A stretch of DNA of 64,000 nucleotides from Octopus bimaculoides (Eukaryota): assembly GCF_001194135.2 (NCBI RefSeq), contig NC_068982.1:128712906-128776905 (forward strand). Reading direction: 5' to 3'. The notes beneath the pieces are model-generated. The model was not told where the DNA came from and did no database searches. It saw nothing but the letters and a program-made list of their open reading frames with translations. A program made the translations under genes and the position numbers. Below are positions 1 to 60,893 of the stretch, in pieces. Each line of letters starts with the position of its first letter. Position 1 is the first letter of the stretch.

Positions 1-39
1 TTGAGATAACCAGTGGGCCAACAGGTGGAGATGGCACAT
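1..39 (-). CDS. FN3 exon D73, class C, 3'-truncated by window
   Basis: ttttcag|AT GTG CCA TCT CCA CCT GTT GGC CCA CTG GTT ATC TCA = VPSPPVGPLVIS. Confidence 0.8.
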   Translation of the reverse strand, partial: MCHLHLLAHWLSQ

Positions 40-1751
40 CTGAAAATAGACAAATGAAAATAGGAGAAATAAAATATATGAAAAGTGATAAGCGTTACTT
101 TAGATTAAAATGGAGAATAAGCTGAATAGTATACAATTATGTGAAATGTCAATTCATTGGTTTATTTTGTTTTTGCTTACTAAATTTTTTTAACATACCT
201 ATACAGTATGATGAAAGTTATAAATAGAGTGAAGAACCTATTACTTTCAAAGTTTTTATAAGTTCATTGTAATGAGGCAAAAGAGAAGATGAAAATTGAA
301 AAAGATCACTTATATTGGCCATATTTAGAACAATATTCTTATTGTCAAAGCAGATTTAATAGAATTTAAGGTAAATGTTATTTTAATCAGCAAAATGTGT
401 TTTGGGGAAAAAAATGTATAATTCATTATAATGAAATGCAAGTGGAATATAATTTGTTTGAAATAAATTTATATTTGCTGTTCACTACTCTAAAATACTC
501 TTATACTTTTTTTTTAAAGCTGTCATGTTTCAATTACTCCTATTTTACCATGCTTTAAAATAGCTTAGCCTCAATTTGAACTTCATATTTAAGCAATACC
601 TTTTCCTTCTTTCTCATGAAAAAGGAAAATGAAACTAAAAGTAATGCCAAAACTGATCTATCCTTTAATATATCAATTTAATAAAATTGATATATTAAAG
701 GAGAGAGAGGAATGTTCAGTCCAAGAATATAATCTCTTTAGTTCAAAGTTTGTGTAAATATAAATCATCTTCAGTAACTTATCCTAATTTGATAGTGCCA
801 TATTTGTATGTATGTTCTTGTGGAGATAAAATGAGCTATCTTGAGATAATGTGATCAGATGTCCCTTGGTATTTCTGCTCAATTTCTGTTAACTACATCT
901 TACATAGTCTGATAAGATTTCAGGTAGTCTCTTATGGTTAAATTATTTTAATCTATACTTGACTTCAATTCACATTTAATTCAACATTGCTGAAATTTTA
1001 CCAGAGTGTTTAATCCACCAAACATATTTATCTTATTTTCAAGTTTTTTATGCTGTGTATTTTCAATGCTTTTTTGGTTGTGTGCTCTTCTTATCCTCCA
1101 CTGTTCAATATTTTCAATTTATCCATTGTATTTAATTGCTTTCTTATCTGTTCTCTTTTGGTAACATCAGAGCCTATTTTCTATGTTAAGGGTGCTTTCC
1201 TACATTAATTCTATCTACATCAGATTTTCAGTAACATATTCTGAATCCTCTCATAAGTTCCTTATTTTCATGTTCCTCTTTCTTATTTATAATTCAATAC
1301 AATGATACAGTAGCAAATTTATGGGACAACTAGCATGGTTACATTAATTATTTTGCATGCCCTATTTCAATTTCTGAGTATTGCTGAATAGTGGAAGCTA
1401 TAGTCACATAGAGAACCGAACAATATCTACTGACTCTATTTTTCCTTTGGCTTGTAATTTCTGGCAATCTTCTTCCATCTGGATGATATGATGGACTCTA
1501 AGATAGATCGGAGGGCCTAAAGATAGATATTTTATTCCAGGGTTAAACCACTGTCAAGTTGGAGAGGAAGGTAAGGGGGGAAAGAGAGGTGTCACAATCC
1601 AGTAAATTTACTGAATAGTAAGTGACAGTAATCTTCACTACACAATATTTTGTAAGCACAAAAGATTTTATTTTATTTATATATCAACAGTAAAATATCA
1701 ACACCATACTCACAACAAAAATAGAACTAAAATATTTAAAAAGAAACTTAC

Positions 1752-2057
1752 CAAATGGACTACGAGCTAAAGTAGCTGCGTCTGTCTCAAGAGGTGGACT
1801 CTGTCCAATCTTGTTGACTGCAATAACTCTGAAGAGATATTCATTCTTCTCATAAAGGCCTTTAACACACATTTCATATGTTGAAGCATCCACTTGATCT
1901 ACCCTACTCCATATATGGGCTTTAGTATGCTTCTTCTCAACATTGTAAGCAATAATTGGTGAACCACCATCATCCTTTGGTGCCTTCCATTTAATACTGA
2001 TGCTAGTACGTTGGACATCAGTAATGTCAAGAGGACCAGTAGGACATGAAGGTACAG
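1752..2057 (-). CDS. FN3 exon D72, class A
   Basis: VPSCPTGPLDITDVQRT...LARSPF; 306 bp. Confidence 0.9.
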
Positions 2058-2234
2058 CTAAAAAGAACAAGGTAAAAACAATATTTTTAAATTGTTAAAA
2101 AATTAGAATTATGAAAATATTTAATTCTTTAAATTCTTATATATCTTCAGTTATTTTCATAAATATTTTTTATCTATTTCAAATCAATATTTTATGGAAT
2201 ATATCTGTAAATAGGTGTCATTTGAGATACTTAC

Positions 2235-2537
2235 TTGCTTCTCTTGTTGGAACAACAGCTTCAGGAAGTTCAGCAGACTTTCCAGGTCCAACTTTGTTTT
2301 CTGCAGTAACTGAGAAGTAATATTCAGTACCCTCAGTTAAGTCAGGTACACGGCAAGCTGTTTCTTTACCATCAATTGTCATCAGTTTGACCCAATCAGA
2401 TTTCTTATCTTTCCTCATTCTAATAATATATTTGAGAATAGCTGAACCACCGTCATCTTTAGGATGTCTCCATTGAAGATTAACAAAGTTTTTGCCCACT
2501 TTATTAGCCATGAAAGAAACAGGAATTCCAGGAGGCA
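2235..2537 (-). CDS. FN3 exon D71, class B
   Basis: PPGIPVSFMANKVGKNF...VPTREA; 303 bp. Confidence 0.9.
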
Positions 2538-3199
2538 CTAAAAAAGAGAGAAACATTGGTAAATAAATGCAGGTAATGTAAATTGAATACAAACATATAT
2601 AAAAATAAAAATCTTTATTTGTAGTGGAATGTAAAGTCAAAACTTGCATTTACATATGCTCCTTGTCTGTGTGTCTATCTGTCTGTATATCTATCTGTCT
2701 ACACAACTTTCTGATGTTTAAATATGCCTTATAGTCTTCTATTTAAAGGGAGAAAGAGAAACTGACAAAATATATTTCAACACTTATTTTTCTACAAGAC
2801 TACTACAAAGCTATCGCCAAATCCATCTCATTATTAAATGGGTTATTCTGATAGCAGAAGTTATTATCTACTATTTCCATCATTGTATATGATCTGAGCA
2901 GTCCATAAACTTCGATATATAATGTGAGCCATGATGGTAACTACTTCAGTATATTTGGTTCATCAAAAGTTTTGATTTAATGATATCCACAGTTTGTAAT
3001 ATTGTCACAATCGAATTTCATCCTATTCTTTGTAAAAGACACTCAAAGACATTTTTGTACCAACTGTAACTAACCACTATCTTCATCTCTATAAATATAA
3101 CATTCAAATATAATTTTTCAAGTTTCAAATCTCTTCAAATTTGTGTGTGAATATGGAGAATAAATTTACATTCATACATATCAAGTACTGAGCTTATAT

Positions 3200-3590
3200 T
3201 GGGAATTGCACTGGCCTGGCTCTCCATCAGTTAGGTTATGATTACAAGTATTGCAGTTGATTTGATCAATGGAACAATCAGCCCGTGAAATTAATGTGCA
3301 AACGGCTGAGTATTCCACAGACATGCTACCCCTTAATGCAGCTCTAAGGGATATTCAATGTGACACACTAAATGTGACAAGTACGGCCCATTGAACTACA
3401 GATGCAATTCATTTTTGCCAGCTGAGTGTACTGGAACAATGTGAAATAAAGGGCCTTAGTCATAAGGTCATGAGTTCAGTTCTTGGCGGCACATTGGCCA
3501 GGGACACAAAGTGCCACCAGGAATTGAACTCATGACCTTATGACCAACAGCTGAACAACCTAGCCACTAAGATATGCACCTTCACACTAA
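3200..3590 (-). mobile_element. tRNA-derived SINE with an internal inverted duplication
   Basis: Minus strand has cttagtgg (A-box-like), gagttcaattcc (B-box-like) and the body ttcacattgttccagtacactcagctggcaaaaatg shared with the copy at 20914; boundaries approximate. Confidence 0.65.
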
Positions 3591-3714
3591 AGTACCAACA
3601 GAGTCAATTTTTTTATGCGCTTCCAATGGACTATTACATTTTTATTCAATGTAACATTAACCTTATGTATTTGTACATTACTCTGGTTAAAATGATATAA
3701 ACAATATGTATTTT

Positions 3715-3742
3715 ACACACACACACACATATATACATATAG

Positions 3743-3785
<43 letters not shown>
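3715..3785. repeat. Compound microsatellite (AC)(AT)(AGAT)(AG)
   Basis: Read directly; adjacent to the D70 donor. Confidence 0.95.
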
Positions 3786-3791
3786 ACTTAC

Positions 3792-4097
3792 TTATTTCTC
3801 TTGTTGGTATTGTTGATTCTGATGTCTCCAAGGGTGGACTTTCTCCTTCCTCATTGACAGCAATCACACGGAAGTAATATTCTGTACCCTCGACTAAACC
3901 TGTAACTCTGGCAACAGTAGATTTAGGATCAACCTCTTCTGCTTTGTTCCAAGACAAACGTGCAGCAGATCTTACTTCAACAACATATTTAGTGATTGGA
4001 GTGCCTCCATCACTGTCCGGAGCTCTCCATTCAAGATCAACATAGTCATAAGAGACTTTGGTAACTTCAAGAGGTCCTTTAGGACGAGATGGTACAC
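3792..4097 (-). CDS. FN3 exon D70, class C' (near-identical to D61)
   Basis: VPSRPKGPLEVTKVSYDYVDL...IPTREI; 306 bp. Confidence 0.9.
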
Positions 4098-4871
4098 CTA
4101 AAATGAAGAAATTTAAAGAATGGATGTTTTAAGATAATTCTCTATAATTAAACATGAAGATAAAAATGAATTTGAGTAATTTCTTTTTATTTACAAATCT
4201 ATTTTCAGCAGTTTATAAAAGCATCAAGAAGTAAGTTAGAATTAACTCTATATAACTCATATATATTTTGTCCTTTTCATTACTGTTTATGATAACAAAA
4301 AGAAATATGCATGTGAAACACATATCGGGGTAAAAATATAACTTATGATCTTCTTACACCTAAATTTGTCCAAAATTTGTAGATAAATTTGAAAGCTTAA
4401 TGTAAATAATTCTGAATACTCCACTCAAAGACTTAGATATCTTTAGAAATTCACTGTTCATTGGACACACATTCAACCATAAAAATTTATTTAAAAAAGT
4501 TTATGAACACAAAGTTTTATATAATCAAATTAATTATGCAAATTAAAAAATACAAAGGTATGCATGTGTTTTATGCATTTCAGGGTAATAAGTGAGTGAA
4601 ACTCAACGTGTGCTGTGAAGTCAGATGACAAGTAGAGTTCCAAAGATATTTTTAATTTCATGAGGTTGTTAAAGTAAAATTATCTTAAGATATTTGTTCA
4701 AAAGTGCTATTCACACATTTATTTTTTGCAATAGATTAACTCAAAGATGTTATTTACATTCTTCAACATTCAAATGAATGTTTGAATTATTGGAAATAAA
4801 ATGTAGTATTTTCAAATAAGGTGGCATGGAAACAAATACAATAGAAGATAATATAAAGAGTGGATACTTAC

Positions 4872-5177
4872 TGAAAGAGCTCTTGGCCATTGTTGAAGCT
4901 TCAGTCTCTAATGCATCACTGTGACCAATTTTATTGATTGCAGTAACTCTGAAGTCATATTCACAGTTCTGTCTCAGATCCTCAACGCGGTAGTTGGTCA
5001 CTGAGGGTGCTACCTTAGCCACATTGTTCCAGTATTGTCTATTAGCTTCTTTCTTCTCAATAATGTAACCAGTGAGAGGACTACCTCCATCATCTTCTGG
5101 AGCTTTCCAGGAAATGGAAATAGATGTTTTCTCAATATCATAGGTTTTCAGAGGACCAATTGGTTTCGATGGTTTTT
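4872..5177 (-). CDS. FN3 exon D69, class A' (near-identical to D60)
   Basis: KPSKPIGPLKTYDIEKT...MAKSSF; 306 bp. Confidence 0.9.
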
Positions 5178-5279
5178 CTAAAAATACAAAACAGTACACA
5201 ATGATAGAATAATGTCTCTCAAGTTTTACTCACATCAAATACCAAGAAAGTTTAAGATCTATAGACAAAAATTACAGAG

Positions 5280-5873
5280 NNNNNNNNNNNNNNNNNNNNN
5301 NNNNNNNNNNNNNNNNNNNNNNNNNNNNNNNNNNNNNNNNNNNNNNNNNNNNNNNNNNNNNNNNNNNNNNNNNNNNNNNNNNNNNNNNNNNNNNNNNNNN
5401 NNNNNNNNNNNNNNNNNNNNNNNNNNNNNNNNNNNNNNNNNNNNNNNNNNNNNNNNNNNNNNNNNNNNNNNNNNNNNNNNNNNNNNNNNNNNNNNNNNNN
5501 NNNNNNNNNNNNNNNNNNNNNNNNNNNNNNNNNNNNNNNNNNNNNNNNNNNNNNNNNNNNNNNNNNNNNNNNNNNNNNNNNNNNNNNNNNNNNNNNNNNN
5601 NNNNNNNNNNNNNNNNNNNNNNNNNNNNNNNNNNNNNNNNNNNNNNNNNNNNNNNNNNNNNNNNNNNNNNNNNNNNNNNNNNNNNNNNNNNNNNNNNNNN
5701 NNNNNNNNNNNNNNNNNNNNNNNNNNNNNNNNNNNNNNNNNNNNNNNNNNNNNNNNNNNNNNNNNNNNNNNNNNNNNNNNNNNNNNNNNNNNNNNNNNNN
5801 NNNNNNNNNNNNNNNNNNNNNNNNNNNNNNNNNNNNNNNNNNNNNNNNNNNNNNNNNNNNNNNNNNNNNNNNN
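5280..5873 (-). other. Assembly gap (594 N) probably hiding class B exon D68
   Basis: Both flanks match the introns flanking D59 (5180-5279 with 11375-11476; 5874-5961 with 11850-11937), and the B-A-C order needs a B exon here. Confidence 0.7.
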
Positions 5874-5961
5874 TCTTTAATATCCTACTGAATGAAACAT
5901 AAATACAAAGATTCTGAAAATCTGAACACAAAATTCTAATGAGAAATAGATTATTACACAC

Positions 5962-6267
5962 CAATCTTTCTCATTGGTTTTGTGACATCAGTAGATTCAA
6001 GTGGTTTACTTTGTCCTTCAGCGTTAACAGCAAAGACACGGAAATGGTAACTTGTGTCTTCTGTAAGATTTGGTACTGTAAATGTGGTAGTTTTCTCATT
6101 AACAGTGCCTGCTTTAGTCCAGAAGGTTCTGGAATCTACTCTGTGTTCAATAATGTATCCAGTTATTGGTGTACCACCATCATTGGCAGATGGTTTCCAG
6201 CTCAAGTCAGCAGAATTATTGGTGACATTTGTGATCTCCAATGGACCAACTGGTGCAGATGGCACAT
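5962..6267 (-). CDS. FN3 exon D67, class C (near-identical to D58)
   Basis: VPSAPVGPLEITNVTNNSADL...KPMRKI; 306 bp; donor gtgtgt. Confidence 0.88.
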
Positions 6268-6469
6268 CTAAGAAATAGAAAGGAAATATATGTAATATGA
6301 CACTTACTATATTGCTGTTATTGATAAATATTACTGAAAATTCAGTTGGCTCATTTTACCTTTTCAATGAAAATACTTTTGTTATTTCAATTATTTTAAC
6401 GTAACATTTTGTTTTACTATTAAAAGCAAATTTCAAAAAATACATTCAATATATAATGGCTAAACTTAC

Positions 6470-6775
6470 CAAATGGACTTCTGGCCATTGTAGCATCCCT
6501 AGTTTCCAAAGGTTCACTCTCTCCAATTTTGTTTTCAGCAATCACTCTGAAGTGATACATGGTTCTTTCTTGGAGATCCCTAACACAATAATCTGTGATG
6601 TCAGCACGAACTTTCTCAACCTTTGACCAGTATCGAGCAGACTCGGGACGTTTTTCTATGATGTATCCAATAATAGGAGAACCGCCATCATCAGATGGTG
6701 CTTTCCATTTGATGCTGATAGATTTACGCTGGACATCGGTAACAGTAAGAGGACCAATTGGTTTGGATGGAATTA
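6470..6775 (-). CDS. FN3 exon D66, class A (near-identical to D57)
   Basis: IPSKPIGPLTVTDVQRK...MARSPF; 306 bp; manual translation. Confidence 0.88.
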
Positions 6776-6921
6776 CTGAAAGTAAATTTATAATTTATAT
6801 AAACATCTTTCTTTAAACACTTCTGTCTACTTTTAACCAGATTATAATTTCAAATATACACGATATTCTAATTTCAAGTATAAATTTATTTTTCTGCAAA
6901 TATTCAAGTGAAAATACTTAC

Positions 6922-7224
6922 AAAGTCCCTTCTTTGTAGTGACAGGTTTCGATGTTTCAGTAGCTTCACCTTTTCCAAGTTTGTTTTCAGCACATACAGA
7001 GAAATAGTAGTCCATATCTTCTTCAAGTCTAGTAGCTTTACAGAATGTATCGTAAGCTCCAACAGTTGCCAGTTTAGTCCAGTTTCCTAATTTATGTGGA
7101 GATATTTCAACATGGTATTTAGTAATTGGTGTTCCTCCATCTGATTTTGGTTGATTCCACTCAAGTTCAACAAAGTCTTCACCAACTCTGCTAGCTCGGA
7201 CATTGACAGGTGGTCCTGGTAGTG
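6922..7224 (-). CDS. FN3 exon D65, class B
   Basis: LPGPPVNVRASRVGEDF...TKKGL; 303 bp. Confidence 0.9.
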
Positions 7225-7610
7225 CTAGAAAAAATTTGAACATTGTATTATTTTAAACGTTTTAAGATTAGGATAATAGGAACGCTTTAAGATTAGGATA
7301 CTAGTGTTTGACAAATATTGATAAGGTACGATGTGAAATACATTAAAAATGTGATTATGTATTTTCTGTCAATTAATGATTTTCAGCTTTCAAGTTATTA
7401 GTCATAGCTTTTCACTCTCAATGAATTGTCCTTTGGGTACAGTATTAATTCATTTCTTGAGAATTTAATTGGTATTAGAGTCTATTAAGGAAAGGGGAAA
7501 AGCTGTGTAGTAAGACCCAACTAACTGGTTATTGACATGTAGTGACAAGATTAAATCATTTTCAATGGTGACATTACATATATACACAGACTTTACATAT
7601 GTATGTGTGA

Positions 7611-7731
7611 ATGTATGTATGTATGTATGTATGTATGTATGTATGTATGTATGTATGTATGTATGCATGTATGTATGAATGAATGAATGCAAGCATGTGT
7701 CTATGTTTGTGTGTGTGTGTGTGTGTGTGTG
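7611..7731. repeat. Compound microsatellite (TATG)n, (TGAA)n, (GT)n
   Basis: Read directly. Confidence 0.95.
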
Positions 7732-8000
7732 TTCATACATGTATATATGCTGTTATAAATTGAACTCTCATCTTTCTTGATCTCATATATCTTTCCACCA
7801 TTATAATAGTTTCCATGTGGCCTTTTAGCTATTGCATATAAAGTAAATTTATGTTTACATAATATTGTTTACAGTGGGTAGGATAAAGTAAATTTATTGA
7901 ACTACCTGATCACATGGTTCATCAGCTCACTAGAGACACATTCTACACAATTTTGTTTAAATTTCGATATTATACTCAACATTAGTTAACTATAACTCAC

Positions 8001-8303
8001 CAAGCTCCCTCATTGGTTTAACAGAATCTGATTCCAAAGGACGGCTGTGCCCTTCAGCATTGACAGCAATAACTCTGAAGAAATATTCTGTTCCTTCCAT
8101 CAAATTGCTGCATGTATATGTTGTCTGTTTTGGATCCACTGTTGCTGCCTTTGACCATGTAGATCTAGTAGCAGTTCTGTATTCTATCAAATATCCTGTT
8201 ATGGGTGTTCCACCATCTTTTTCAGATGGTTTCCATTCAAGATCAGCTGAATTGTAGGTGACATTTGACACAGCAAGTGGCCCAACAGGTGGAGATGGTA
8301 CAT
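8001..8303 (-). CDS. FN3 exon D64, class C
   Basis: VPSPPVGPLAVSNVTYNSADL...KPMREL; 303 bp. Confidence 0.9.
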
Positions 8304-8595
8304 CTGTAAATACAAAGTAGGATGATATTGTGCATCATGTTGGAATACAATGAGATGATAAGGATTTCATTTTATTATACAATGATAATTATTTGCTATT
8401 ACAAATACATTTAATTGAATTTTTAATGTATTTTTTTCAGAAAAATTAAACATGTATTGCAATAAAATTATGAAATTTTTGGTAGACCTAAAAAGTGTTA
8501 CTGATAGTGATATAATGTATAAAAATTAAAATACATGTTAAGGAAATATAATTCATGTTAAACAGTTGAACCAGAAGTAACAGAAGACGTCATAC

Positions 8596-8901
8596 CATAA
8601 GGACTTCTTGTGAGTATAGTAGAATCAGACTCAAGTGGGACACTCTGACCAATTGCATTTATGGCCATGACTCTAAATAGGTACTCATTCTTTTCATATA
8701 GATTTCGGACACACATTTCAAATGTTGAGGTATCCACTTGATCAACTCTGCTCCATAACAGTGCTCTGGGATGTTTCTTTTCCACCTTATATCCAATAAT
8801 TGGTGAACCACCATCGTCCTTTGATGCTTTCCATTTAATATTAATGCTGGAACGTTGAACATCAGTGATATCAAGAGGACCAGTTGGTATAGAAGGTACA
8901 G
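8596..8901 (-). CDS. FN3 exon D63, class A
   Basis: VPSIPTGPLDITDVQRS...LTRSPY; 306 bp. Confidence 0.9.
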
Positions 8902-9038
8902 CTGAAAGATTTTCAAATGCAAGGAAAAAATCAAATATATTGTATAGCTTGAAATAGTACACTGTTTAAATACATATATGAGATCAATCGTAAATAAAGA
9001 TGAACCAAATAGAGGATAAAATAAAATGTTTTACTTAC

Positions 9039-9341
9039 TTGCTTCTCTAAGAGGGATGATAGCTTCAGAAATCTCTGCCATCTTGCCAAAACCAGCTTTG
9101 TTTTCAGCACAGACAGCAAAGTAATATTCAATGCCTTCTTTCAAATGTGTTGCTCTGAAACTTCGGCTGCTACCATCAATAGTCACCATAGTTTGCCATT
9201 CACTCTTTCTGTCTTTCCTTGATTTTATTGCATATTTTGTTATCTTAGAACCACCATCATCTTTAGGATGCTTCCATTCAAGATTCACAAAGTCTTTACC
9301 AATCTTTGTAGCCGTAAGATTAACAGGAGGTCCAGGTGGCA
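9039..9341 (-). CDS. FN3 exon D62, class B
   Basis: PPGPPVNLTATKIGKDF...IPLREA; 303 bp. Confidence 0.9.
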
Positions 9342-9487
9342 CTAATAAAGTAAAATATGATAAGTAAAATATAGTTTCTTAGAAAAATGAAGCAATTACT
9401 CAGAAAATAAAATAACTATCTATTCTACAAATTCATCCAAACATAAAATCACACATAAATACATATACGAGTAACTTTTTGACTTAC

Positions 9488-9793: not shown

Positions 9794-9862
9794 CTATAAT
9801 AAGAAATACGGAGATTACCAAATTAATGAAAACAAGTTCATAAGTATTCAATAGAAGTATAT

Positions 9863-41689: not shown

Positions 41690-41690
41690 T

Positions 41691-43544: not shown

Positions 43545-43607
43545 CTATATTTAAAAAAAGGAGAAAACAAAAATGTAAATAAAGATTTGAAAGTAACAGA
43601 ATTATTT

Positions 43608-51083: not shown

Positions 51084-51560
51084 TTGGTATAAAAGATGGT
51101 CTACAGCAAATATTTTGCTCAATACCAGACTTCCTTGTCAGTTGTTGACCATAACCAGTTGAGTATGTCCCTTAGTGGCTGATGATATGTGCATCTCTGA
51201 TCATGAGCAGAAGTAGTGGGGGAGCATCATAGCCATGTGTTGAGAGAAATTCTTTGGAGTTTGAAAAATATTTACCTCAGGAAAGATGGGTGTTTTGTTC
51301 AAATTCCCTAAACAACCTTTATTGAGGGACCTTTTGAGCAGGATGGGCTACTCAGCCTGAAGAAAATTCTAACTGGGCCCTACCTGCAAGGTCATCCACT
51401 GTTTATTTTGATGTGAGATCACCATGCTGCACAGATAATGTTGTGCTGGATGTGCCTGGTGTACCATTATCAGACAGGTAGTCATGATAGGTAGACTGGG
51501 TTTCGTATATTTTACCTCAGTGTCACTTTGATAGCATGCACTGTTCTCTCACATAACAAC
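51084..51560 (+). mobile_element. ~470-bp dispersed retroposon-like element with an (AAT)n tail, second copy
   Basis: Colinear with 35312-35795; AAT-rich tail continues to about 51636. Confidence 0.7.
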
Positions 51561-51958
51561 AATAATAATAATAATTATTATAATAATAATCATAATAATT
51601 ATAATAATAATCATAATAATAATAATAATAATAATATACTTTTTGATACTTGTAACCACATCTTCAAAGCTAGAACTTTTACTTTTTTTTAATATTTACA
51701 TTTTCACAATGTTTTGATTGGTCTGCTCTCTGGTGGTTACCAGGTGTCTAACTCCAGGGTGTATAAATAATATAAGAGGAGATACAAACCATGAATTATT
51801 TCTAACATCATAGTAATAATGTAGTGTATGTATCAGAATTTTGTGAGAGTGAGGTAAATAATACTTAACATAGCTAAAGCAGAAACTAGGAAATAAAATA
51901 AATATAATTTCTTTGCTTATGGTCTAAAATAATGAGATAAACAATTATAGTTATTTAC

Positions 51959-52264
51959 CAAATGGACTCTTTGCAAGAGTTGCTTCTTTTGTTTCTAATG
52001 GCTCACTTTGTCCAACACTGTTTACAGCAAATACCCGGAAGAAGTATTCAGTCTTTTCAGTTAGTTTTTTGCAACACAAGTCAAAAGTTATCTCATCAAC
52101 TTTATCTACTGATGTCCATACAGTACTGTTTGCTGGGCGTTTTTCAATTATATAGCCTGTGATAGGTGAATTGCCATCACTTTTGGGGGCTTTCCATCTG
52201 ATGCTGATAGAGTTTCGCTGAACATCAGTGACTTCAATAGGTCCAAGAGGTGGTGAAGGTACAG
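51959..52264 (-). CDS. FN3 exon D12, class A
   Basis: VPSPPLGPIEVTDVQRN...LAKSPF; 306 bp. Confidence 0.9.
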
Positions 52265-52798
52265 CTAAAAGTAAAGACCAAATTAAATGTAATACAATCT
52301 TTCTTGTGAATATAATATAAAATAAATTTACATATTTGACTTGAATGTCTATTTTATCATACACCATTTGAAATTAATTCATTAGACTAGAAAGATATTA
52401 ATTGTTAATCTAAAAATTTGTTTCTGATTAATTTTAAAAGTGTAAGTAAACACTATAAATTGCTCAAGACAAGCATAACTTCTGACTACCTTTCTGTTAT
52501 AGTAGGTTAGTCTTGATGGATAGCAGATATGACAGAATGTGGATAGCAAAAAAGTAAAGAGACCAACACTCTTTATACATAATACTTAATATAAGTTATA
52601 TTAGAAATGAAGAGATGACAATGATTTCAATAACTTCCAAAATGATGGTTCTGTCCCACAATACTAAGCAGCATTGATACCATCCAATGATATCTGCTCA
52701 TTTAGGCTCACAAAAGAGTAATTTCCAGATATTTTAGGCAGGATCATTTTCCTTTCTCCCTAAAATTAATTACTAAACTATTTACCTTTCACTAAGAT

Positions 52799-52800
<2 letters not shown>

Positions 52801-52829
<29 letters not shown>

Positions 52830-52861
52830 GTTATGTGAAAGGAGAAGAGAGAGAGAGAGAG

Positions 52862-52899
<38 letters not shown>
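52801..52899. repeat. (GT)n(AG)n(GT)n microsatellite
   Basis: Read directly. Confidence 0.95.
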
Positions 52900-52901
<2 letters not shown>

Positions 52902-52932
52902 CACATGCATGTTTTACTGAATGTATACATAC

Positions 52933-53235
52933 TTGCGGCAGCCTTAGGAATAACTGCTTTGTCTGTGATTGCTTCTTTACCAATACCAGCTTTGTTCTCA
53001 GCAGAGACTGCAAAGAAATGTTCAACATTCTCTTGCAGTTTAGGTATTTTGGCTTTTGTGTCAAAAGCATCAACTGTTTCAACTTTCACCAAATCTCCAG
53101 TTCTTTTAATTCTTTTGAAAATGTGGTAATGTGTTACAGGAGAACCTCCATTCTGTTTTGGTGGTGACCAGGTGATTGAAGCAAAGTCTTTTCCAACTTC
53201 GACAACCTCCAAATTAACTGGCGGACCTGGTGGTC
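52933..53235 (-). CDS. FN3 exon D11, class B
   Basis: PPGPPVNLEVVEVGKDF...IPKAAA; 303 bp. Confidence 0.9.
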
Positions 53236-53464
53236 CTATTAAATGAAACAAAAAATATTTCATATTAGTTTTGTTTATTTCCTAACTTTGTAAATACAAA
53301 TTACAATTAATAGTAACTGATACAAATTATATCACATCATCATCATTTAAAATCCGTTGTCCATGCTGGCAAAATTTACTCTATCTAATTTTAAATAAAT
53401 AAATACGTTTTGCTAATGATTTATACACATGCATACTCACATGTACACTACACATACATGACTA

Positions 53465-53610
53465 GGCTTCTTTCAGTTTCCAACAACCAAATTCATTCAC
53501 AAGGCATTAGGTACTTTAGAAGACATTTTGCCAAGGTATCACACAATGGGACAGAGCCCAAAATCATGTGGTTGAGAAATGAACTACTTAAACACACAAC
53601 CATGCCTGTG
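53465..53610. mobile_element. SINE-like fragment
   Basis: ggcttctttcagtttcc...caaattcattcacaaggc matches 41845-41890 (ggtttctttcagtttcc...caaattcactcacaaggc). Confidence 0.5.
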
Positions 53611-53791
53611 CACATACATACATTTTCTAAAGGAATCAGTTAATTTGCTCAATAGCATGCTACTATGTAATATTTATTTTCATAAATTATATTGACTGTT
53701 AAAGTTATATGAAGTATTTCAAAACATAATCTTAGATCAAAACATTTGCCAAACCAGGCAAATTTCATATTTACAAAAACAAATACTTTAC

Positions 53792-54097
53792 CTATACGTG
53801 CTGTACATTTTGTTACATCATCTGCTTCCAGTGGAGGACTCTGTCCTTCTGCATTGACAGCAATGACTCTGAACCAATACTCAGTACCTTCTTCAAGGGC
53901 CATTGCAGTATAAGTTGTTGTTTTTCCATTTACACTGCTGAGTTTTTTCCATCCAGTGCAATATGAAGGTTTAATCTCAATAATGTAACTTGTAATAGGT
54001 GTACCACCATCCTCTTTGGGTGGCTTCCATTCAAGATCAGCAGAATTTGTGGTGACATTTTTGATCTCAAGAGGACCAATTGGAATTGATGGGCAAT
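53792..54097 (-). CDS. FN3 exon D10, class C
   Basis: CPSIPIGPLEIKNVTTNSADL...KCTARI; 306 bp; AAG acceptor. Confidence 0.88.
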
Positions 54098-54608
54098 CTT
54101 TGAAACAGAACAGAAATTAAATATATTGAAATGTCATCAGTATCTTCCAATATTAAAAATTAATTTTCTTTATTCAGTTTATTCAAATACTTAAACATAC
54201 AAAAGTACATTAATCATTGTGATAGACAACTAATTAAAATCAAATGTTGATAAATTTAGTTTTATCTCTATTAAACCAGAAACATAAAATTTATATTCAT
54301 AATAATAATTTTATTGAACAAAACTATTTAATTTATCATAAAAGTATTTGCCATTCTTATTGAATAAAATTATCTAATTTAATATATAAATAGATAAATA
54401 ATACTTGCCAAATTTATTCAACAAAACTACTTAAACTATCATAAAAATAGATTATATTTTCTAATTTTATTGAATAAAATCAATTTATTTTAAAATAAAC
54501 GATAATAATAATATCTGCCAAAACAATAAATTATAAAGAAATGGAAAACACAGAAAGCAATTTAGACTTATAAAAATGCTCAAAAATATGTTATGAATAT
54601 CAACTCAC

Positions 54609-54914
54609 CAAAAGGACTTTTAACTAAGGTTGCTTCCTTTGTTTCCAAAGGAGGACTTTGGCCAACTTTGTTAACAGCAATCACTCTGAAATGATATTTG
54701 GTTTTCTCAGTAAGATGGGTTGCAGTGTAGGTTAAAGTGGAGTCATTGACTTTGCCAGCCTTTGTCCAATTTGTTATAGATTCTTCTCTATATTCAATGA
54801 TATAGCCTGTAATTGGTGAACCACCATCATTTTCAGGTTCTTTCCATTTGATAGATATGGCATCACGTTTGACATCTGTAACTTCAATGGGACCAACACA
54901 CATTGATGGGACTT
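54609..54914 (-). CDS. FN3 exon D9, class A
   Basis: VPSMCVGPIEVTDVKRD...LVKSPF; 306 bp. Confidence 0.9.
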
Positions 54915-55369
54915 CTGAAACAAAAAGGATAAATAACATATAGTATCTATAGTATCACTTCCTTTTTAAATATGCATAAAATATAAAATAATTTTCATAG
55001 TAAATAATGATTTATTATTAACTATTTCAATTAATATTTTCTTATTATCAAGACATACTTCTTATGATATCTGATAATTAAAGGGGTGGGGGTGTTACCC
55101 TAAAGTTAGCTTTATTTGATAGTTAATATGAGGTTATGATTTCAGTCCTTACTGGGAGTTCTAAAATATGGGGACAAAGGACTTGAAGAAAATATTTTGC
55201 TTTTATCAAGTTTAAATAATAGAGAAAATTTGTTTTATAAAACCAAACTGAAGTTTGTCTTTTATAAAATTGCTGTTTAAATTTAGAAATATTTTTCTTG
55301 AAATATCATAATCAAGAGATTATGATTAAATTCAAATATTCTATTTTGCATATTTTACTTGTTTCAAGA

Positions 55370-55545
55370 TTGTGGCCATGCTGGGGTACCAGCATGAAGG
55401 GCTTAGTCAAACAAATCAAACCCAGCCCATATTTTTAAAGTCTGATACTTATTCTATTAGTCTCATTTGCTGAACTGCTACATTATGGGGATGCAAATAA
55501 ACCAACACTAGTTGCCAAGTGGTGAGATGGAGACAAACACAAAAG
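55370..55545. mobile_element. Dispersed repeat, third family, second copy
   Basis: Aligns by eye to 41440-41630; followed by CA-rich repeats as in the other copy. Confidence 0.5.
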
Positions 55546-56074
55546 CACACTCATGAGTGTGCATACACATACACGCACATGCACACACACACACACATAC
55601 AATGGGCCTCCACACAGTTACAGAATGTATATCAAAAGATAACATAGAGTGAAATATTAACTTTACATAATTATTTTACTTTTAATAAATTACAACATTT
55701 ATCTTAGAAAATCCTAAAAATATTTTCTATGATCTAGTTCCTAAATAAATCTATTTGTCAAGGAGCAATAGGAAATATCATTCTTAAATCAATAACAACT
55801 AGTATGATAGCATCTATCCTGAGCATCACATCAAGTCAACAAGCAATTGGGGCACCTAAAGAGTTTGAGATCATTTTACACAAATGAAAATCCATCTGAC
55901 TACACTAAAATCTAAAAAATGCTCTGAGTGTATCAAAAACACCAACAGAATGAAAAAGTTAGAGGCTCAATTCTACACTAAATCAAAGTATAAACTTATT
56001 TTTATTTAATAATACATCTGTTATTGTAAGGTGAATCTCTCCACAACATTAGTACAATTGTATATGAAACTTAC

Positions 56075-56374
56075 TTGGCTTTTTCACAAGAGTGATCTTT
56101 TTCGATTCACATGAATCGCTTATTCCAGCTTCATTTTCAGCAAAAACAGCAAAATAGTAATCAGTATCAGGTTCAGCATTTTTCAGTTTATACTTCCTGT
56201 CATATTCATCAATTTTGGCAACATCTTCCCATTTGTCACTAGCTTTGTGTTTCTTTTTAAGAATATATTGGGTGATCTTTGATCCACCATCATTCTTAGG
56301 TGGTTGCCACTCAAGTTCAATGAAATCTTCACCCGTTTTAGTTGGTTTCAAATTAATCGGTGGTCCTGGTCGGG
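56075..56374 (-). CDS. FN3 exon D8, class B
   Basis: RPGPPINLKPTKTGEDF...LVKKP; 300 bp. Confidence 0.9.
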
Positions 56375-56461
56375 CTGAAAAGCAAATGCACATAAAATGT
56401 CAAAAATATTGCAAAAATACTTCTGTTGTAAAACATTGAAGAAATTAGTCATGTTGTTTAA

Positions 56462-56681
56462 CCCTTTAGCATTTGAACTGACCATATCAAGCCCAAATAT
56501 TGTATATGCTTTATGGTCAAACAAAGAGATCTGGCTTCTCACGCCTACTCTACAACTTCTACTCTAAAACTAAGCAATCATATCATTGAAACCTAAAAGT
56601 TACAAGATAATACATGATTAATTTAGAACTATGTGAATAAATAAGCATTACATTTGTTAAAGTAATCTGAATGCTAAAGGG
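56462..56681. mobile_element. piggyBac-like MITE (220 bp)
   Basis: Perfect 12-bp TIRs ccctttagcatt / aatgctaaaggg, flanked by TTAA and CTAA; CCC...GGG ends with a TTAA target are piggyBac hallmarks. Confidence 0.75.
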
Positions 56682-56760
56682 CTAATCATTTATTTGAATT
56701 TTAGATTGTAAGAAAAAAATAAGACAAATACGAAAACATAGTGTGGAAAAAAATAGTTAC

Positions 56761-57066
56761 CAATTTTCTTTTTAATAATGGTTGTATCAGCAGCCTCCAA
56801 TGGCTCGCTTTTACCTTCTGCATTGACTGCTATCACTCTAAACTGATATTCTGTTCCTGCTGATAGATCAGGCACTGTAAATGTTGTAGATTTACCATCA
56901 ACACTGCCAGTTTTAGACCAAGATGATCGTGAAGCTTGTTTATACTCAATGATATAGCTAGTAATTGGTGTTCCGCCATCACTTTCTGAAGGTTTCCATC
57001 GAAGATCAGCAGAGTTTGATGTAACATCAGTTACCTCAAGAGGTCCTCTTGGTTTTGAAGGAACAT
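56761..57066 (-). CDS. FN3 exon D7, class C (P[KR]GPL subtype)
   Basis: VPSKPRGPLEVTDVTSNSADL...IKKKI; 306 bp. Confidence 0.9.
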
Positions 57067-58322
57067 CTGAAATATATATATTCATATGATTATATAGTTT
57101 ACTATACAAATTGTTAAATCACATTATTATGTCATTTGTGTGTGTTTAAGTGTATACACATGTGATATGTTTACAGCGCTGTAAAATTTATAATCATATT
57201 TTAGACAAACTGAAATTTTACAACACTTGTATTTGTAAATGAGCTGTAAAACTAGAAAACCAAATAATTCTCTTAAGACAATATCCTACAAATCTAATGC
57301 AATCCTCTGAAGTACCTTTAAAATACACCAAAAGGCTCATTCTCAAGATGGAATATGAGACAGTGAATATCTTAAGCTAATGGCCATTAATATCTGTCTA
57401 ATCATTTCCAAGAAGATTTACAGTCATATGATGCAAAATAACATATCAAATTATATGTAATGTCCTGATGTCAAATGACATCTGATGTAAAAGTTTTCTG
57501 ATGGGAATGTACAAATAGAATTGTATTTTAATGTATTAGAAATATTCTCCTTAGGAGAAACCTTGTTAAATATTTGTTATTGCTACATCAAATATTAGTG
57601 TTAGAGACAATTCAATCAGGTGAGGTAGGTCACTGGCCATAAACCCTGAATATTATTATAGATTTATCACAACTATAATTATTGGAACAAATGATTATGT
57701 AAAAACCATATGATAGGTCAGGATTCTGGATTCATTGTATTAAAAAAGAAAAGAAACAGCTGACTTAAACTAAATCAATTAGTGGCATGAAAGCAACATT
57801 CAAATTTTGTCTAAAATTGCAGTGTTTGACTTAAGCTGTCAGTTGATCAATTATTGTATTTATTGAATTATGTATCTACTTTTATTGTAGTGACTAGTGA
57901 AAATCACTAGTGCCTAAAGAATTCAACTGAGGGATGGATACCTGAGTTTAACAGACCCATTATCTATCAACTATAAAATACAACGATGAGCATATGTATC
58001 TAATAATCAGAGTAACAGTTCAAATTACAGAGCAATGCAGACTAAGAGAACTGTAAAAATCCTGGTTTGCTGTAAAATACTGGAACAGCTTCTCCATGCA
58101 AACAAGGTCGCTATTGTTACAGAGTTGACTTGTTCCTTCACTCCATCATTTAGGTGAAGTGTAGCCTTTTCTGAGTTAGCTGCTCTGACCATAGATGCAA
58201 AACAACCTCTGCTTTCTTTGATGCTATCTATTACCCTGTCTATCTCCCCTTGTATTGCAGTGAACAAGCTTATATGAAATGCAGTGTATGATATTTTAAT
58301 TACAAGTTACAAGGTTACTAAC

Positions 58323-58628
58323 CAAATGGACTTCTTGCAAGAGTAGTATCTTTGGTTTCTAAAGGTTCACTTTGGCCAATCTTATTGACAGCAATTACTC
58401 TAAACAGATATTCTGTTTTCTCAGTAAGGTATGGGCAACGTAATTTTGTAGTACTTTCATCCACTTTTTCAACTCGTTGCCATTTCATTTGAGCTGGTTC
58501 CTTCCTTTCTACTATGTAGCCAGTGATGGGAGAACCACCATCATCTTCAGGCATTTTCCACTGAATTGTGATGTTATCTCGTTGGACATCAATGACATCA
58601 ATAGGTCCCACAGGTTTGCCAGGGGCAG
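58323..58628 (-). CDS. FN3 exon D6, class A
   Basis: APGKPVGPIDVIDVQRD...LARSPF; 306 bp; donor gttagt. Confidence 0.9.
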
Positions 58629-59478
58629 CTACAAAAATATAAATAAAATAATGATTATAAAATCCAGAATTAATTATTTCCTAAGTTACAAGAAAATCAG
58701 GCGAAAACTGGCTATAGTATTGATGAACATACCATATTTGGTATGCAAAAAAAGCTTTGGATGAAATTTAAGATTATGAAGGTTAGACAAATATTTTAAG
58801 GCTATATGCATATAAATAACTAAACACACACACACACATATGCACATGCATAATACATATATGCATAAATATACATATTTATAAATGTCAATTAATGAAT
58901 AACAAAAGAACAAAAATTATGTAATTAATTTCATTAGCTTACAGCTATTTCTACAATAAGAAGCATACATTCAGAACTAAGTGTTCGTGCAACATCTTAT
59001 AGCTTCCTCTGAGCCAACACATACATGTGTCTGTGTCTATTTATCTTTCTATCTGTCTGTCTTTCAGTATGTATGTACGTATGTTTATATACATACTCAC
59101 ACACATGAATAAAAAGAGAGTCAAAGAAAGTTGATGAGAGTCTTTATGATACTCATGTGAAAAACAGAGAAATCTGAAGTAAGTTGTTTCAGAGCAAGTA
59201 TGAATTAAAGACACAATGTTAAAATTATGTTTACAAAAATTAGGGTGATACATGTATCACATATGAATGAAAACTATAATTGCTTTAAGTGAGTTGAATT
59301 AAATGAAATAATTAAATCTATAAAATGCTTAGCAGTAGCATAGCAATATCTTGAGCATCAACAAGTACTGTTATATATTATTATTATTGTTATTAAATGG
59401 CAATTTATTGATATATGTGATATGTCCATATTTAATTTGATATAGGGGTCTCAAAATGTACAATCAAAGATTACTTAC

Positions 59479-59778
59479 TTGGTTCTCTTTTTGGTACTAC
59501 TTTCTCTGTTTCTGCCGCTGGACCAACACCAGCACTATTTTCAGCACATACAGAGAAGTAATGCTCAACATTTTCCTTGAGGCCTTTAACTTTGTAGGTC
59601 AATTCAAATTCACTAGTGGTGGCCACTTTCTCCCAATCACCAGTTGCCTTTATTTTCTTTTTCAAGTGGTAAGCTGTAACCTTGGAACCTCCATCAACTT
59701 TTGGTGCCTTCCATTGCAGAGTAGCAAAATCTGCACCAACTTTGTCAACAGTAAACTTGATTGGTGGACCAGGAGGCT
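59479..59778 (-). CDS. FN3 exon D5, class B
   Basis: PPGPPIKFTVDKVGADF...VPKREP; 300 bp. Confidence 0.9.
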
Positions 59779-60244
59779 CTGATATTACAAAAAACACATG
59801 CATTATTATAATTAACAAACCACATCATTATCAGATATCTATATAAGGAATTACTATTGCATCTCTAAGACCAATATTGTAATCTGATTAAACTAAAAGG
59901 GTATAACTTCAATTATTTAATGGTAATCCACTCTTTGTTAAAATTTGGAATCTTTTTTATGCCAACTTATTTTGAAGATATTCAACATTTTGAAAATATC
60001 AGTATTTACTGCATATGCTTGCATATAAGTTATAACATGTTCACATTATTTTTGTTTCAATTTTTCACCCATATTGTTTTTCATAAATACTGTACACAAT
60101 ACTGCATGAAATATCGTTAAAAATCGAAAAACTGAAAAAATCCCAATCATAACCAGTATTGTCTAGCAAAGTTCCAGAATCATAGGTACCATCGTAATGT
60201 GTTTCTATAATCAATGTCTGGAATCATCAACATCACCATCATCA

Positions 60245-60435
60245 TTGTCGTTTAACGTCTGCTTTCCATGCTAGCATGGGTTGGACGATTTGACTGAGGA
60301 CTGGTGGACCAGGTGGCCACACCAGGCTCCAATCTGATCTGGCAGAGTTTCTACAGCTGGATGCCCTTCCTAATGCCAACCACTCTGAGGGTGTAGGGAT
60401 GCCCTTCCTAACACCAACCAGTCCGAGAGTGGAGG
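60245..60435 (+). mobile_element. Retroposon-like fragment with an internal duplication
   Basis: GC-rich island; ggatgcccttcctaa(tg/ca)ccaacca occurs twice in tandem; follows an (ATC)n tract. Confidence 0.5.
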
Positions 60436-60587
60436 AATGTTCAGATTAAATGATACTTTTAAATCACCATGCCTGATTGACTGGCATTATAGGCAAAAAC
60501 TAATAGGAATAAGAATTATTGCAGGGAAATGGTGCTGTTAGTCAATGTTTTAAATAGGAATAAAGAAGAACATTAAATCTGTCTTAC

Positions 60588-60893
60588 CAATTTTTCTAGT
60601 TGGTTTGGTTGTATCAGTAGCTTCAAGAGGAGCTCCGACACCTTCATCATTTACAGCACTAACACGGAAAATGTATTCTGTATCTTCCAGCAAACCAGTT
60701 GCAGTGAAAGTTAATGTTTTACCATCAACATTGCCACATTTTCCCCATGTTGATCTGGTTGCTGTCCTGTTTTCAATAATATAACCTGTGATAGGAAGAC
60801 CACCATCACTTTTAGGTTTCTTCCATTCAAGATCAGCAGAGTTTATAGTGACATTGCTTATTTCCAAAGGTCCAATAGGAGCTGATGGAACAG
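60588..60893 (-). CDS. FN3 exon D4, class C
   Basis: VPSAPIGPLEISNVTINSADL...KPTRKI; 306 bp. Confidence 0.9.

What the first reader, a model, noticed from the sequence alone, without database searches (positions are those of the whole stretch)
1..60893. Nested 9-domain super-repeat (3 x 3) across the whole array
Seen: among class C domains the motif P[KR]GPL occurs at D7, 16, 25, 34, 43, 52, 61 and 70, exactly every ninth domain, and in no other class C domain I could read. Close pairs are also 9 apart: D4/D13, D5/D14, D11/D20, D16/D25, and D28/55/64/73 (VPSPPVGPL). Established: vertebrate titin uses 7- and 11-domain super-repeats. Inference: the array grew by 9-exon block duplication and kept its register, which suggests a binding partner with matching periodicity.
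Basis: seen in the sequence. Interest (0 to 1): 0.8.

Follow-up and report, generated by a model that had tools for sequence, protein, structure and literature searches.

The report
Conserved nine-domain FN3 super-repeat array
The window is part of one giant muscle-type (titin-like) gene made only of fibronectin-III domains, whose downstream two-thirds is a true nine-domain (3 x 3) super-repeat conserved domain for domain in a distant species, an invertebrate counterpart of titin's 7- and 11-domain super-repeats that I did not find described.

Summary
On the minus strand, 73 FN3 domains run in A-B-C order, one per phase-1 exon; one exon holds six domains and one is hidden in an N gap. They splice into an open 7,205-residue frame. 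P[KR]GPL occurs in class C only at D7, 16, 25 ... 70. Mean identity is 0.35 between classes, 0.52 at offsets 3, 6 and 12, 0.62 at 9 and 0.56 at 18 (z = 11.5).

The array has two zones. D28-D73 is a strong nine-domain super-repeat that does not decay with distance (0.60, 0.58, 0.58, 0.57 against 0.49). D1-D27 is mostly a plain triplet array with a weak 9-signal (p = 0.009) plus the motif.

A gap-free 127-kb contig from a distant species (synonymous sites saturated) holds one-to-one orthologues of D6-D64. It holds at least 84 domains in a perfect 0-8 cycle. The motif is kept at the orthologues of D7, 16 and 25.

Twenty-six position-diagnostic columns exist, against none in shuffles. Both species show recent in-register duplication or conversion at the 3' end.

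Block duplication and a kept register are supported. A periodic binding partner is plausible by analogy with titin but untested. I rate it a new variant of a known kind.

The parts
1..64000 (-). Continuous array of 73 FN3 domains (D1 cut by the window end, D73 cut by the window start) in A-B-C order. It is part of one larger gene that runs off both ends of the window.
   Evidence: 66 visible exons with AG/GT borders in phase 1-1, and an open spliced frame of 7,205 residues. Pfam fn3 at E = 4.7e-47 for one triplet. No other Pfam domain in ten intronic ORFs.
42165..64000 (-). Zone 1: D1-D27, a plain A-B-C triplet array with only a weak 9-register.
   Evidence: offset-9 excess of 0.036 (p = 0.009); 8 of 26 domains in register by zone-2 profiles; cross-species offset 9 is 0.593 against 0.55-0.57.
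1..41110 (-). Zone 2: D28-D73, nine-domain super-repeats (positions 0-8), 5.1 copies inside the window.
   Evidence: identity of 0.60, 0.58, 0.58, 0.57 at offsets 9, 18, 27, 36 against 0.49 at other multiples of 3; z = 8.6.
33404..41110 (-). Super-repeat copy 1 (D28-D36).
   Evidence: Exon table; orthologues E4-E12.
24211..32330 (-). Super-repeat copy 2 (D37-D45).
15237..23850 (-). Super-repeat copy 3 (D46-D54).
8596..14129 (-). Super-repeat copy 4 (D55-D63).
1752..8303 (-). Super-repeat copy 5 (D64-D72; D68 is hidden in the gap).
   Evidence: D66-72 are classified in register, 6 of 6.
56761..57066 (-). D7, class C exon with SKPRGPL.
   Evidence: the orthologue has VPSKPRGPL.
48335..48640 (-). 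D16, class C exon with SKPKGPL.
   Evidence: the orthologue has VPSKPRGPL.
44275..44580 (-). D25, class C exon with SSPRGPL.
   Evidence: the orthologue has VPSIPRGPL.
35823..36128 (-). D34, position-6 exon (GHPKGPL, VSHNYVDLEW).
26185..26490 (-). D43, position-6 exon (ARPRGPL).
17216..17521 (-). D52, position-6 exon (GRPKGPL).
9488..9793 (-). D61, position-6 exon (SRPKGPL).
   Evidence: A database fragment, P0122, equals D61+D62 spliced exactly as predicted here.
3792..4097 (-). D70, position-6 exon (SRPKGPL), 96.6% identical in DNA to D61.
3786..6814 (-). Recent in-register copy (D66-D70) of 9482-12871 (D57-D61).
   Evidence: exons and short introns are 94-99% identical, with dS of 0.015-0.07. 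The long introns 4113-4840 and 9808-11031 are unrelated.
5280..5873 (-). Assembly gap that hides one exon (D68, position 4, class A).
   Evidence: the flanks are colinear with 11032-11474 and with 11850 onward, which bracket exon D59 (11493-11798).
46045..47871 (-). Single exon of 1,827 nt that encodes six domains (D17-D22).
   Evidence: It is also fused in the close relative L001. It is six separate exons in the distant species.

Best explanation
WHAT IT IS (shown). The window is an internal stretch of one very large gene for an FN3-only modular protein. Its domains are of the sarcomeric titin / MyBP-C type. The array has two zones. The upstream zone repeats a three-domain unit (A-B-C). The downstream zone repeats a nine-domain unit made of three differentiated triplets (positions 1-2-3, 4-5-6 and 7-8-0).

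HOW IT AROSE (shown). The nine-domain unit was built and multiplied before the split from a species whose synonymous sites are now saturated. Since then, copies 1-4 have been kept one-to-one under purifying selection, with dN about 0.19 against dS of 1.5 or more. The 3' copies still duplicate or convert in register in both lineages.

HOW IT WORKS (inferred). Each of the nine positions keeps its own polar and charged residues. These are most numerous at positions 5, 6 and 7 and include the P[KR]G motif. From this I infer that the chain lies along a periodic filament. The most likely partner is the myosin/paramyosin thick filament. Each super-repeat would then present one specialised 4-5-6 triplet per structural period, as titin's C-zone does with its 11-domain unit. 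On that reading it is a scaffold or template, not a spring.
For: ARCHITECTURE AND STATISTICS.

CROSS-SPECIES CONSERVATION.
- Profiles trained only on the window read the other species' contig as 0123456780 repeated, over 79 domains seen (84 with an unfetched 5.7-kb stretch counted as 5), without a single break.
- All 79 zone-2 domains have a best window match at the position the cycle predicts.
- Orthologues of D6-D64 are colinear and one-to-one, at a mean of 72% identity, against about 60% for in-register paralogues.
- In cross-species paralogue comparisons identity is 0.61, 0.60 and 0.58 at offsets 9, 18 and 27, against 0.48-0.49 elsewhere. The signal is therefore not due to recent homogenisation.

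POSITION-SPECIFIC CONSTRAINT.
- 26 diagnostic columns against 0 in 200 shuffles; within-position identity 0.609 against 0.475.
- P[KR]GPL is kept at the orthologues of D7, 16 and 25 and is absent from those of D10, 13, 19 and 22.

SARCOMERIC TYPE. The best solved relatives are titin chains in cardiac thick-filament structures (8q6t at E = 1e-139; 8g4l), followed by MyBP-C and myomesin.

STRUCTURE MODEL. The position-6 domain is predicted with pLDDT of 91-98. Of its eight diagnostic residues, R4 and K6 lie in the N-terminal linker, K36 at the end of the BC loop, and E85 and P87 in the FG loop. From general knowledge of the FN3 fold, these sites sit together at the pole that faces the preceding domain.
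Against: - No localisation, expression or binding data exist.
- The gene ends, and any Ig or kinase domains, lie outside the window.
- The organism is unidentified.
- At titin's packing of 43 nm per 11 domains, nine FN3 domains would span about 35 nm, not the 43.5 nm of invertebrate thick filaments. The match to a thick-filament period is therefore not evident.
- Zone 1 shows that long stretches of the protein work with only a three-domain period.
- Unequal crossing-over keeps register on its own, so register alone proves no function.
- The limpet Lottia has only about five A-B-C triplets and no 9-cycle, so the super-repeat is not universal in molluscs.
Confidence: 0.6

Rival explanations
1. 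The 9-period is only a historical footprint. A three-triplet block was duplicated by unequal crossing-over, which keeps register automatically. The positions are functionally interchangeable, and no periodic partner exists.
For: Recent in-register duplication or conversion is seen in both species. Zone 1 functions with a three-domain period. Lottia lacks the 9-cycle.
Against: Copies D28-D63 have not been homogenised since a split that is old enough to saturate synonymous sites. Even so, 26 mostly polar or charged position-specific residues persist in at least 85% of 10-13 non-redundant copies per position in both lineages, against 0 in shuffles. Neutral surface residues should have been randomised over that time.
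Confidence: 0.22
2. The super-repeat does track a periodic partner, but the partner is the actin thin filament or another lattice with a period of about 36-39 nm, not the thick filament.
For: This is inference only. Nine FN3 domains at 3.9-4.3 nm each (from the titin C-zone figure of 11 domains per 43 nm, and from extended tandem structures) span 35-39 nm. That is closer to the actin crossover or tropomyosin period than to 43.5 nm.
Against: The closest relatives of these domains are thick-filament proteins. I know of no FN3-only thin-filament ruler. The domain spacing in situ is unknown.
Confidence: 0.12
3. It is an extracellular or membrane-bound FN3 array (adhesion or matrix protein), not a sarcomeric protein.
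For: FN3-only arrays are common outside cells. Class C domains carry N-V-T sequons. Contactins, receptor phosphatases and Dscam appear among the weaker matches to solved structures.
Against: Titin A-band chains match far better (E = 1e-139 against 1e-17 or weaker). The DGGSPITGY and EY.FRV.A.N..G signature is that of titin-type domains. No conserved cysteines, signal peptide or transmembrane segment occur in 7,205 residues.
Confidence: 0.05
4. The periodicity is an assembly artefact, such as collapsed or duplicated haplotypes or misjoined scaffolds around the N gaps.
For: Five N gaps are present. D57-61 and D66-70 are 94-100% identical in protein, and one gap sits inside that block.
Against: The signal stays at z = 8.6 in D28-D65, without the near-identical block. 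The two near-identical blocks differ by 1-6% and have unrelated long introns. A gap-free contig from another species shows the same order, domain for domain. A close relative's contig is colinear over D16-D27.
Confidence: 0.01

Closest known systems
Vertebrate titin A-band super-repeats (7-domain D-zone, 11-domain C-zone)
   Same: Tandem ~100-residue domains of the same sequence type. Domains at the same super-repeat position resemble each other more than they resemble their neighbours. The position-specific pattern is conserved between distant species. The array is organised in two zones. One domain per phase-1 exon is the rule.
   Different: No Ig domains at all in 73 domains. The period is 9 = 3 x 3, not 7 or 11. 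The source is an invertebrate, whose nearest named homologues are gastropod proteins. Nothing is known of its correspondence to a filament period. The 3' copies still vary by recent in-register duplication.
Twitchin / projectin [Fn-Fn-Ig] pattern of invertebrate thick-filament proteins
   Same: An invertebrate protein with a three-domain basic period built from titin-type FN3 domains. Twitchin-like proteins are among the database homologues.
   Different: Here the third member of the triplet is also FN3. A second-order period of nine sits on top of the triplet. The array is much longer: at least 73 domains here and at least 106 in the relative, against 15 FN3 in mussel twitchin (PMC12040844). 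No kinase domain is visible in the window.
Nebulin 7-module super-repeats and titin I-band Ig block duplications
   Same: A nested repeat hierarchy, with recent in-register segmental duplication of whole blocks of exons inside the array.
   Different: The fold and the partner are unrelated (nebulin). In the titin I-band case the function is a spring, not a template.

Membership tests
Titin-type sarcomeric FN3 domain | FN3 fold whose sequence is closest to FN3 domains of titin, MyBP-C and myomesin | tested here: met
   Pfam fn3 at E = 4.7e-47. Titin chains of thick-filament structures at E = 1e-139 (8q6t) and 7e-138 (8g4l), then MyBP-C and myomesin. AF2 model of D61-D62: pLDDT 91-98 in the first domain, with a strand pattern that fits FN3.
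Titin / twitchin / projectin family of giant kinases | Ig (I-set) domains interspersed with the FN3 domains | tested here: not met
   There is no Ig domain among the 73 domains, and no Pfam hit in ten intronic ORFs of exon size. This applies to the window only. The Lottia locus has I-set domains upstream of its A-B-C triplets.
Titin / twitchin / projectin family of giant kinases | [quoted passage not shown] | not testable with these tools
   The gene runs off both ends of the window. The relative's contig ends while still inside the FN3 array.
Titin / twitchin / projectin family of giant kinases | Localisation in the sarcomere, bound to thick filaments | not testable with these tools
   No expression or localisation data are available.
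Domain super-repeat (as defined for the titin A-band) | Identity between domains one period apart exceeds identity between same-type domains at other offsets | tested here: met
   0.62 at offset 9 against 0.51-0.52 overall. In D26-D65 the values are 0.60, 0.58, 0.58, 0.57 against 0.49. z = 11.5 for the whole array and 8.6 for D28-D65.
Domain super-repeat (as defined for the titin A-band) | Position-specific pattern conserved between species | tested here: met
   A perfect 0-8 cycle over the 79 zone-2 domains seen in the other species; the unfetched 5.7 kb is assumed to hold 5 more. 79 of 79 best matches are in register. 26 diagnostic columns against 0 in shuffles.
Domain super-repeat (as defined for the titin A-band) | Period matches a structural period of the bound filament | not testable with these tools
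   Only an arithmetic estimate is possible: 9 domains span about 35-39 nm.

The most novel reading that the evidence does not exclude
Some invertebrates (probably molluscs) have an Ig-free giant FN3 protein of more than 1 MDa. Its nine-domain super-repeat would template a periodic feature of the myosin/paramyosin filament, making it a titin-like ruler or blueprint with a different period. Its copy number, still changing by in-register duplication, would tune filament architecture between lineages.
Probability: 0.3. Interest if true: 0.85.

Novelty: new variant of a known kind. Interest (0 to 1): 0.66.

Why it matters
Titin's super-repeats are the textbook case of a protein whose domain pattern mirrors the filament it binds and sets that filament's layout. 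Whether invertebrate thick filaments have any comparable template is an open question; they differ in length, symmetry and paramyosin content.

A deeply conserved nine-FN3 super-repeat, with at least nine copies in one species, offers a concrete candidate. It also gives a sharp test: antibodies or nanobodies to one position should label stripes one super-repeat apart.

It is also a clean natural example of how such arrays evolve. Old copies are frozen one-to-one across species. Next to them is a 3' growth zone that still duplicates in register.

Full-text searches found no description of an Ig-free 3 x 3 FN3 super-repeat. Automatic gene models of the locus surely exist under names such as titin-like or twitchin-like.

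Tried and rejected
- ORGANISM. Not resolved. The database fragments that equal D61+62 and D63+64 carry only UniParc numbers (UPI0006954C3D, UPI0006953AF7). A search with the intronic LINE fragment gave nothing informative. Two exact look-ups of the six-domain ORF found no record. A text search for the run accession of the close relative found only an unrelated paper.
- P0030 AS CROSS-SPECIES EVIDENCE. I first treated this 405-residue fragment (positions 2-3-4-5) as evidence from another species. Its UniParc number lies next to those of the window's own fragments. It is probably a further part of the same gene in the same species, so I dropped it as such evidence.
- LOTTIA LOCUS L004. It has about five A-B-C triplets and then other FN3 patterns, with no 9-cycle. 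It shows only that the triplet is older than the super-repeat, or that the super-repeat was lost there.
- LABELLING SLIP. The first count of diagnostic columns was wrong because one low-scoring domain was dropped and the labels shifted. It was redone with labels taken from the profiles.
- OTHER CHECKS. There are no tRNA genes in the window. No Ig or other domain occurs in intronic ORFs. One search was an empty script.
- PAPERS READ. The paper on connectin/titin evolution (PMC12198301) and the catch-muscle review (PMC12040844) do not describe such an array.

Full report
WHAT IS IN THE WINDOW

The window is AT-rich (about 32% G+C) and has five N gaps. Its minus strand carries one uninterrupted series of fibronectin type III (FN3) exons.

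A profile built from the six domains of the one long exon finds 71 domains on the minus strand and only three sub-threshold matches (E = 2.6-6.0) on the plus strand. A further domain starts in the first 45 bases (DVPSPPVGPLVIS). One more is hidden in the gap at 5280-5873.

Every visible exon has AG and GT borders in phase 1-1. Exons are 306 nt (classes B and C, with three of 300-303) or 294-306 nt (class A). The exception is one exon of 1,827 nt that holds D17-D22. Spliced, they give an open frame of 7,205 residues without a stop.

Two database fragments, P0122 and P0124, equal D61+D62 and D63+D64 joined exactly as predicted. Intronic ORFs of exon size have no Pfam match, so no Ig or other domain is interspersed. 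The domain order is A (PPGPP...), B (VPS.P.GPI.V.DVQR) and C (DVPS.P.GPL...NVT) throughout.

CHECKING THE OBSERVATION

P[KR]GPL is present in 8 of the 24 class C domains whose start can be read. These are D7, 16, 25, 34, 43, 52, 61 and 70 and no others. The chance of that is 1.4e-6.

Mean pairwise identity by domain offset is as follows:
- 0.35 for offsets not divisible by three;
- 0.51-0.52 at offsets 3, 6, 12 and 15;
- 0.62 at 9, 0.564 at 18, 0.545 at 27 and 0.526 at 36.

Shuffling domains within their class never reaches the observed excess at offset 9 (z = 11.5). The excess survives removal of the near-identical D66-70 (0.595). D16/D25 is close only through the motif.

THE GAPS

The flanks of gap 5280-5873 are colinear at 96-98% with the paralogous block one super-repeat upstream. 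There they bracket exactly one exon, D59 at 11493-11798. The gap therefore hides D68, and it is nearer 375 bp than 594 bp.

The other four gaps lie in introns next to a LINE fragment or microsatellites. The gap-free orthologous contig described below has consecutive orthologues across each of them. No domain is missing there, and the frame is continuous.

TWO ZONES

The periodicity is not uniform.
- In D26-D65 identity is 0.60, 0.58, 0.58 and 0.57 at offsets 9, 18, 27 and 36, against 0.49 at the other multiples of three. It does not decay with distance (z = 8.6).
- In D2-D27 the excess is 0.036 (p = 0.009).
- Between the two parts there is no register by overall identity (0.506 against 0.508).
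- Nine position profiles trained on D28-D65 classify D66-D72 correctly (6 of 6). They place only 8 of 26 upstream domains in register.
- The upstream domains all look like the generic types: A like position 7, B like position 2, C like position 0.

So D1-D27 is essentially a triplet array. It shares the P[KR]GPL landmark and a few similar pairs (D4-6 with D13-15). D28 onward is a true 3 x 3 super-repeat, with 5.1 copies inside the window.

EVIDENCE FROM OTHER GENOMES

A close relative (Logan contig L001) is 88-92% identical in DNA and colinear over D16-D27. It has the same fused six-domain exon.

A search with D51-D52 found nine single-exon proteins on one 127-kb gap-free contig of another organism. 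I fetched five overlapping pieces of that contig. It carries 100 full FN3 exons on the part read.

Their best matches in the window run colinearly from D6 to D64, one to one. Mean identity is 72%. The proportion of synonymous differences is 0.63, which is saturated (dS about 1.5). dN is 0.19.

Read with profiles trained only on the window, the contig gives generic types for the orthologues of D6-D27. It then gives 0123456780 repeated without a break over 79 domains, or 84 if an unfetched 5.7-kb stretch holds the five domains its flanks require. That is 9.3 super-repeats up to the contig end. All 79 zone-2 domains have their best window match at the position the cycle predicts.

Comparing paralogues across species rules out recent homogenisation as the cause. 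It gives 0.61, 0.60 and 0.58 at offsets 9, 18 and 27 against 0.48-0.49 elsewhere. In zone 1 it gives 0.593 against 0.55-0.57.

The orthologues of D7, D16 and D25 keep P[KR]GPL. Those of D10, 13, 19 and 22 lack it. The motif is therefore a conserved in-register landmark even in zone 1.

The limpet Lottia has about five A-B-C triplets inside a larger Ig/FN3 gene and no 9-cycle.

HISTORY OF THE COPIES

In-register paralogues of copies 1-4 are old: dS is 1.2-2.0 for three in-register pairs (D34/43, D43/52, D52/61), and DNA similarity is confined to the exons. They predate the species split.

The 3' end is different. D57, 58, 60 and 61 against D66, 67, 69 and 70 have dS of 0.015-0.07, and the short introns are included in the similarity. 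The two long introns are unrelated. One holds a LINE fragment and a gap, and the other holds microsatellites.

The neighbouring pairs D56/65, D62/71 and D63/72 are old. This mosaic fits in-register gene conversion, or a recent block duplication followed by intron turnover.

The other species has its own extra copies of the same unit, 95-100% identical with their introns, at offsets of one or two super-repeats. The nine-exon block is therefore still the unit of change, and copy number probably differs between lineages.

ARE THE POSITIONS FUNCTIONALLY DISTINCT?

I used 102 non-redundant zone-2 domains from both species. In 26 alignment columns, one residue is held by at least 85% of the copies of one position and by at most 15% of the same-class domains at the other two positions. 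Shuffled labels give none in 200 trials. Within-position identity is 0.609 against 0.475.

Positions 6 (R4, K6, S15, K36, E54, R63, E85, P87 in domain numbering), 5 and 7 carry most of these columns. Most of the residues are charged or polar.

In an AlphaFold model of D61-D62 the first domain has pLDDT of 91-98. R4 and K6 fall in the N-terminal linker, K36 at the end of the BC loop, and E85 and P87 in the FG loop. From general knowledge of the FN3 fold, these elements lie together at the pole facing the preceding domain. That placement is an inference.

These copies have evolved separately since before a split that saturated synonymous sites. Retention of such residues therefore indicates position-specific purifying selection.

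WHAT KIND OF PROTEIN IT IS

The closest solved relatives are titin chains in cardiac thick-filament structures (8q6t, E = 1e-139; 8g4l). MyBP-C and myomesin follow. Extracellular FN3 proteins match far more weakly. Database homologues carry names such as titin, twitchin-like, or hypothetical gastropod proteins.

I conclude that this is an intracellular, filament-associated protein of the titin type. It cannot be filed as a member of the titin/twitchin kinase family. No Ig domain occurs in 73 domains, and a kinase domain cannot be checked.

The organism could not be identified. The nearest named homologues are from gastropod molluscs.

MECHANISM

Shown: a conserved nine-position architecture, its age, its mode of growth, and position-specific constraint.

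Inferred: the chain lies along a periodic filament and offers one specialised 4-5-6 triplet per period, as titin's C-zone does with its 11-domain unit.

The partner is unknown. At titin's packing, nine domains span about 35 nm, and fully extended about 39 nm. This does not obviously equal the 43.5-nm repeat of invertebrate thick filaments. It leaves a thin-filament or other partner open.

The main rival is that the period is a historical footprint of unequal crossing-over. That rival is weakened by the conserved diagnostic residues but is not excluded.

NOVELTY

Super-repeats are known in titin (7 and 11 domains) and nebulin. A three-domain Fn-Fn-Ig pattern is known in twitchin and projectin. 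Full-text searches found no description of an Ig-free FN3 array with a nested 3 x 3 super-repeat. I rate it a new variant of a known kind.

Noticed in passing
window 46045-47871 (-): Six consecutive domains (D17-D22) lie in one intron-less exon of 1,827 nt. It is also fused in the close relative (L001). In the distant species (L009, domains 11-16) the orthologues are six separate exons. Five introns were therefore lost together in this lineage, as expected from repair with a spliced cDNA copy.
   Followed up: partly
window 42889-43025 and 43608-43745: A 138-bp direct repeat, 99% identical, flanks exon D26 (43251-43544) on both sides. D26 is the shortest exon of the array (294 nt). This could be the footprint of a one-exon tandem duplication or deletion, or a mobile element pair.
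   Followed up: no
window 9855-10178 (+), next to gap 10179-10471: The 3' end of a LINE-like reverse-transcriptase ORF (…LGLYSLERRRERY…) sits in the intron between D61 and D60. The paralogous intron between D70 and D69 has unrelated sequence.
   Followed up: partly
window 35310-35800 and 51080-51572: An intronic element of about 490 bp is present twice at 84% identity, in introns that are not in register with each other. It is probably a dispersed repeat.
   Followed up: no
window 35086-35240, 33178-33260, 41799-43, 7598-7730, 51553-51636: Long microsatellites, (AGA)n, (GA)n, (TA)n, (TATG)n and (ATA)n, fill several introns. Two of the 10-N gaps sit inside or next to them, which probably explains those gaps.
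   Followed up: partly
window 24211-24513 (D45) and L005 3378-3677: This class B domain lacks the usual GPL/GPI (VPSRPRDFEIVDVQR) and is one residue short. Its orthologue shows the same peculiarity (VPSRPLDLEVVEIQR). It is therefore a conserved feature of that particular copy.
   Followed up: partly
L007 1442-1745 (= L009 14199-14502): The orthologue of D25 in the other species reads through a frameshift and stops. This is either an indel error of that assembly or a decayed exon.
   Followed up: no
L004 (Lottia gigantea KB200919.1, 197900-227802): The limpet locus has about five A-B-C triplets. Other FN3 patterns and I-set domains flank them, split over several short gene models. The triplet array is probably one region of a much larger Ig/FN3 gene.
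   Followed up: partly
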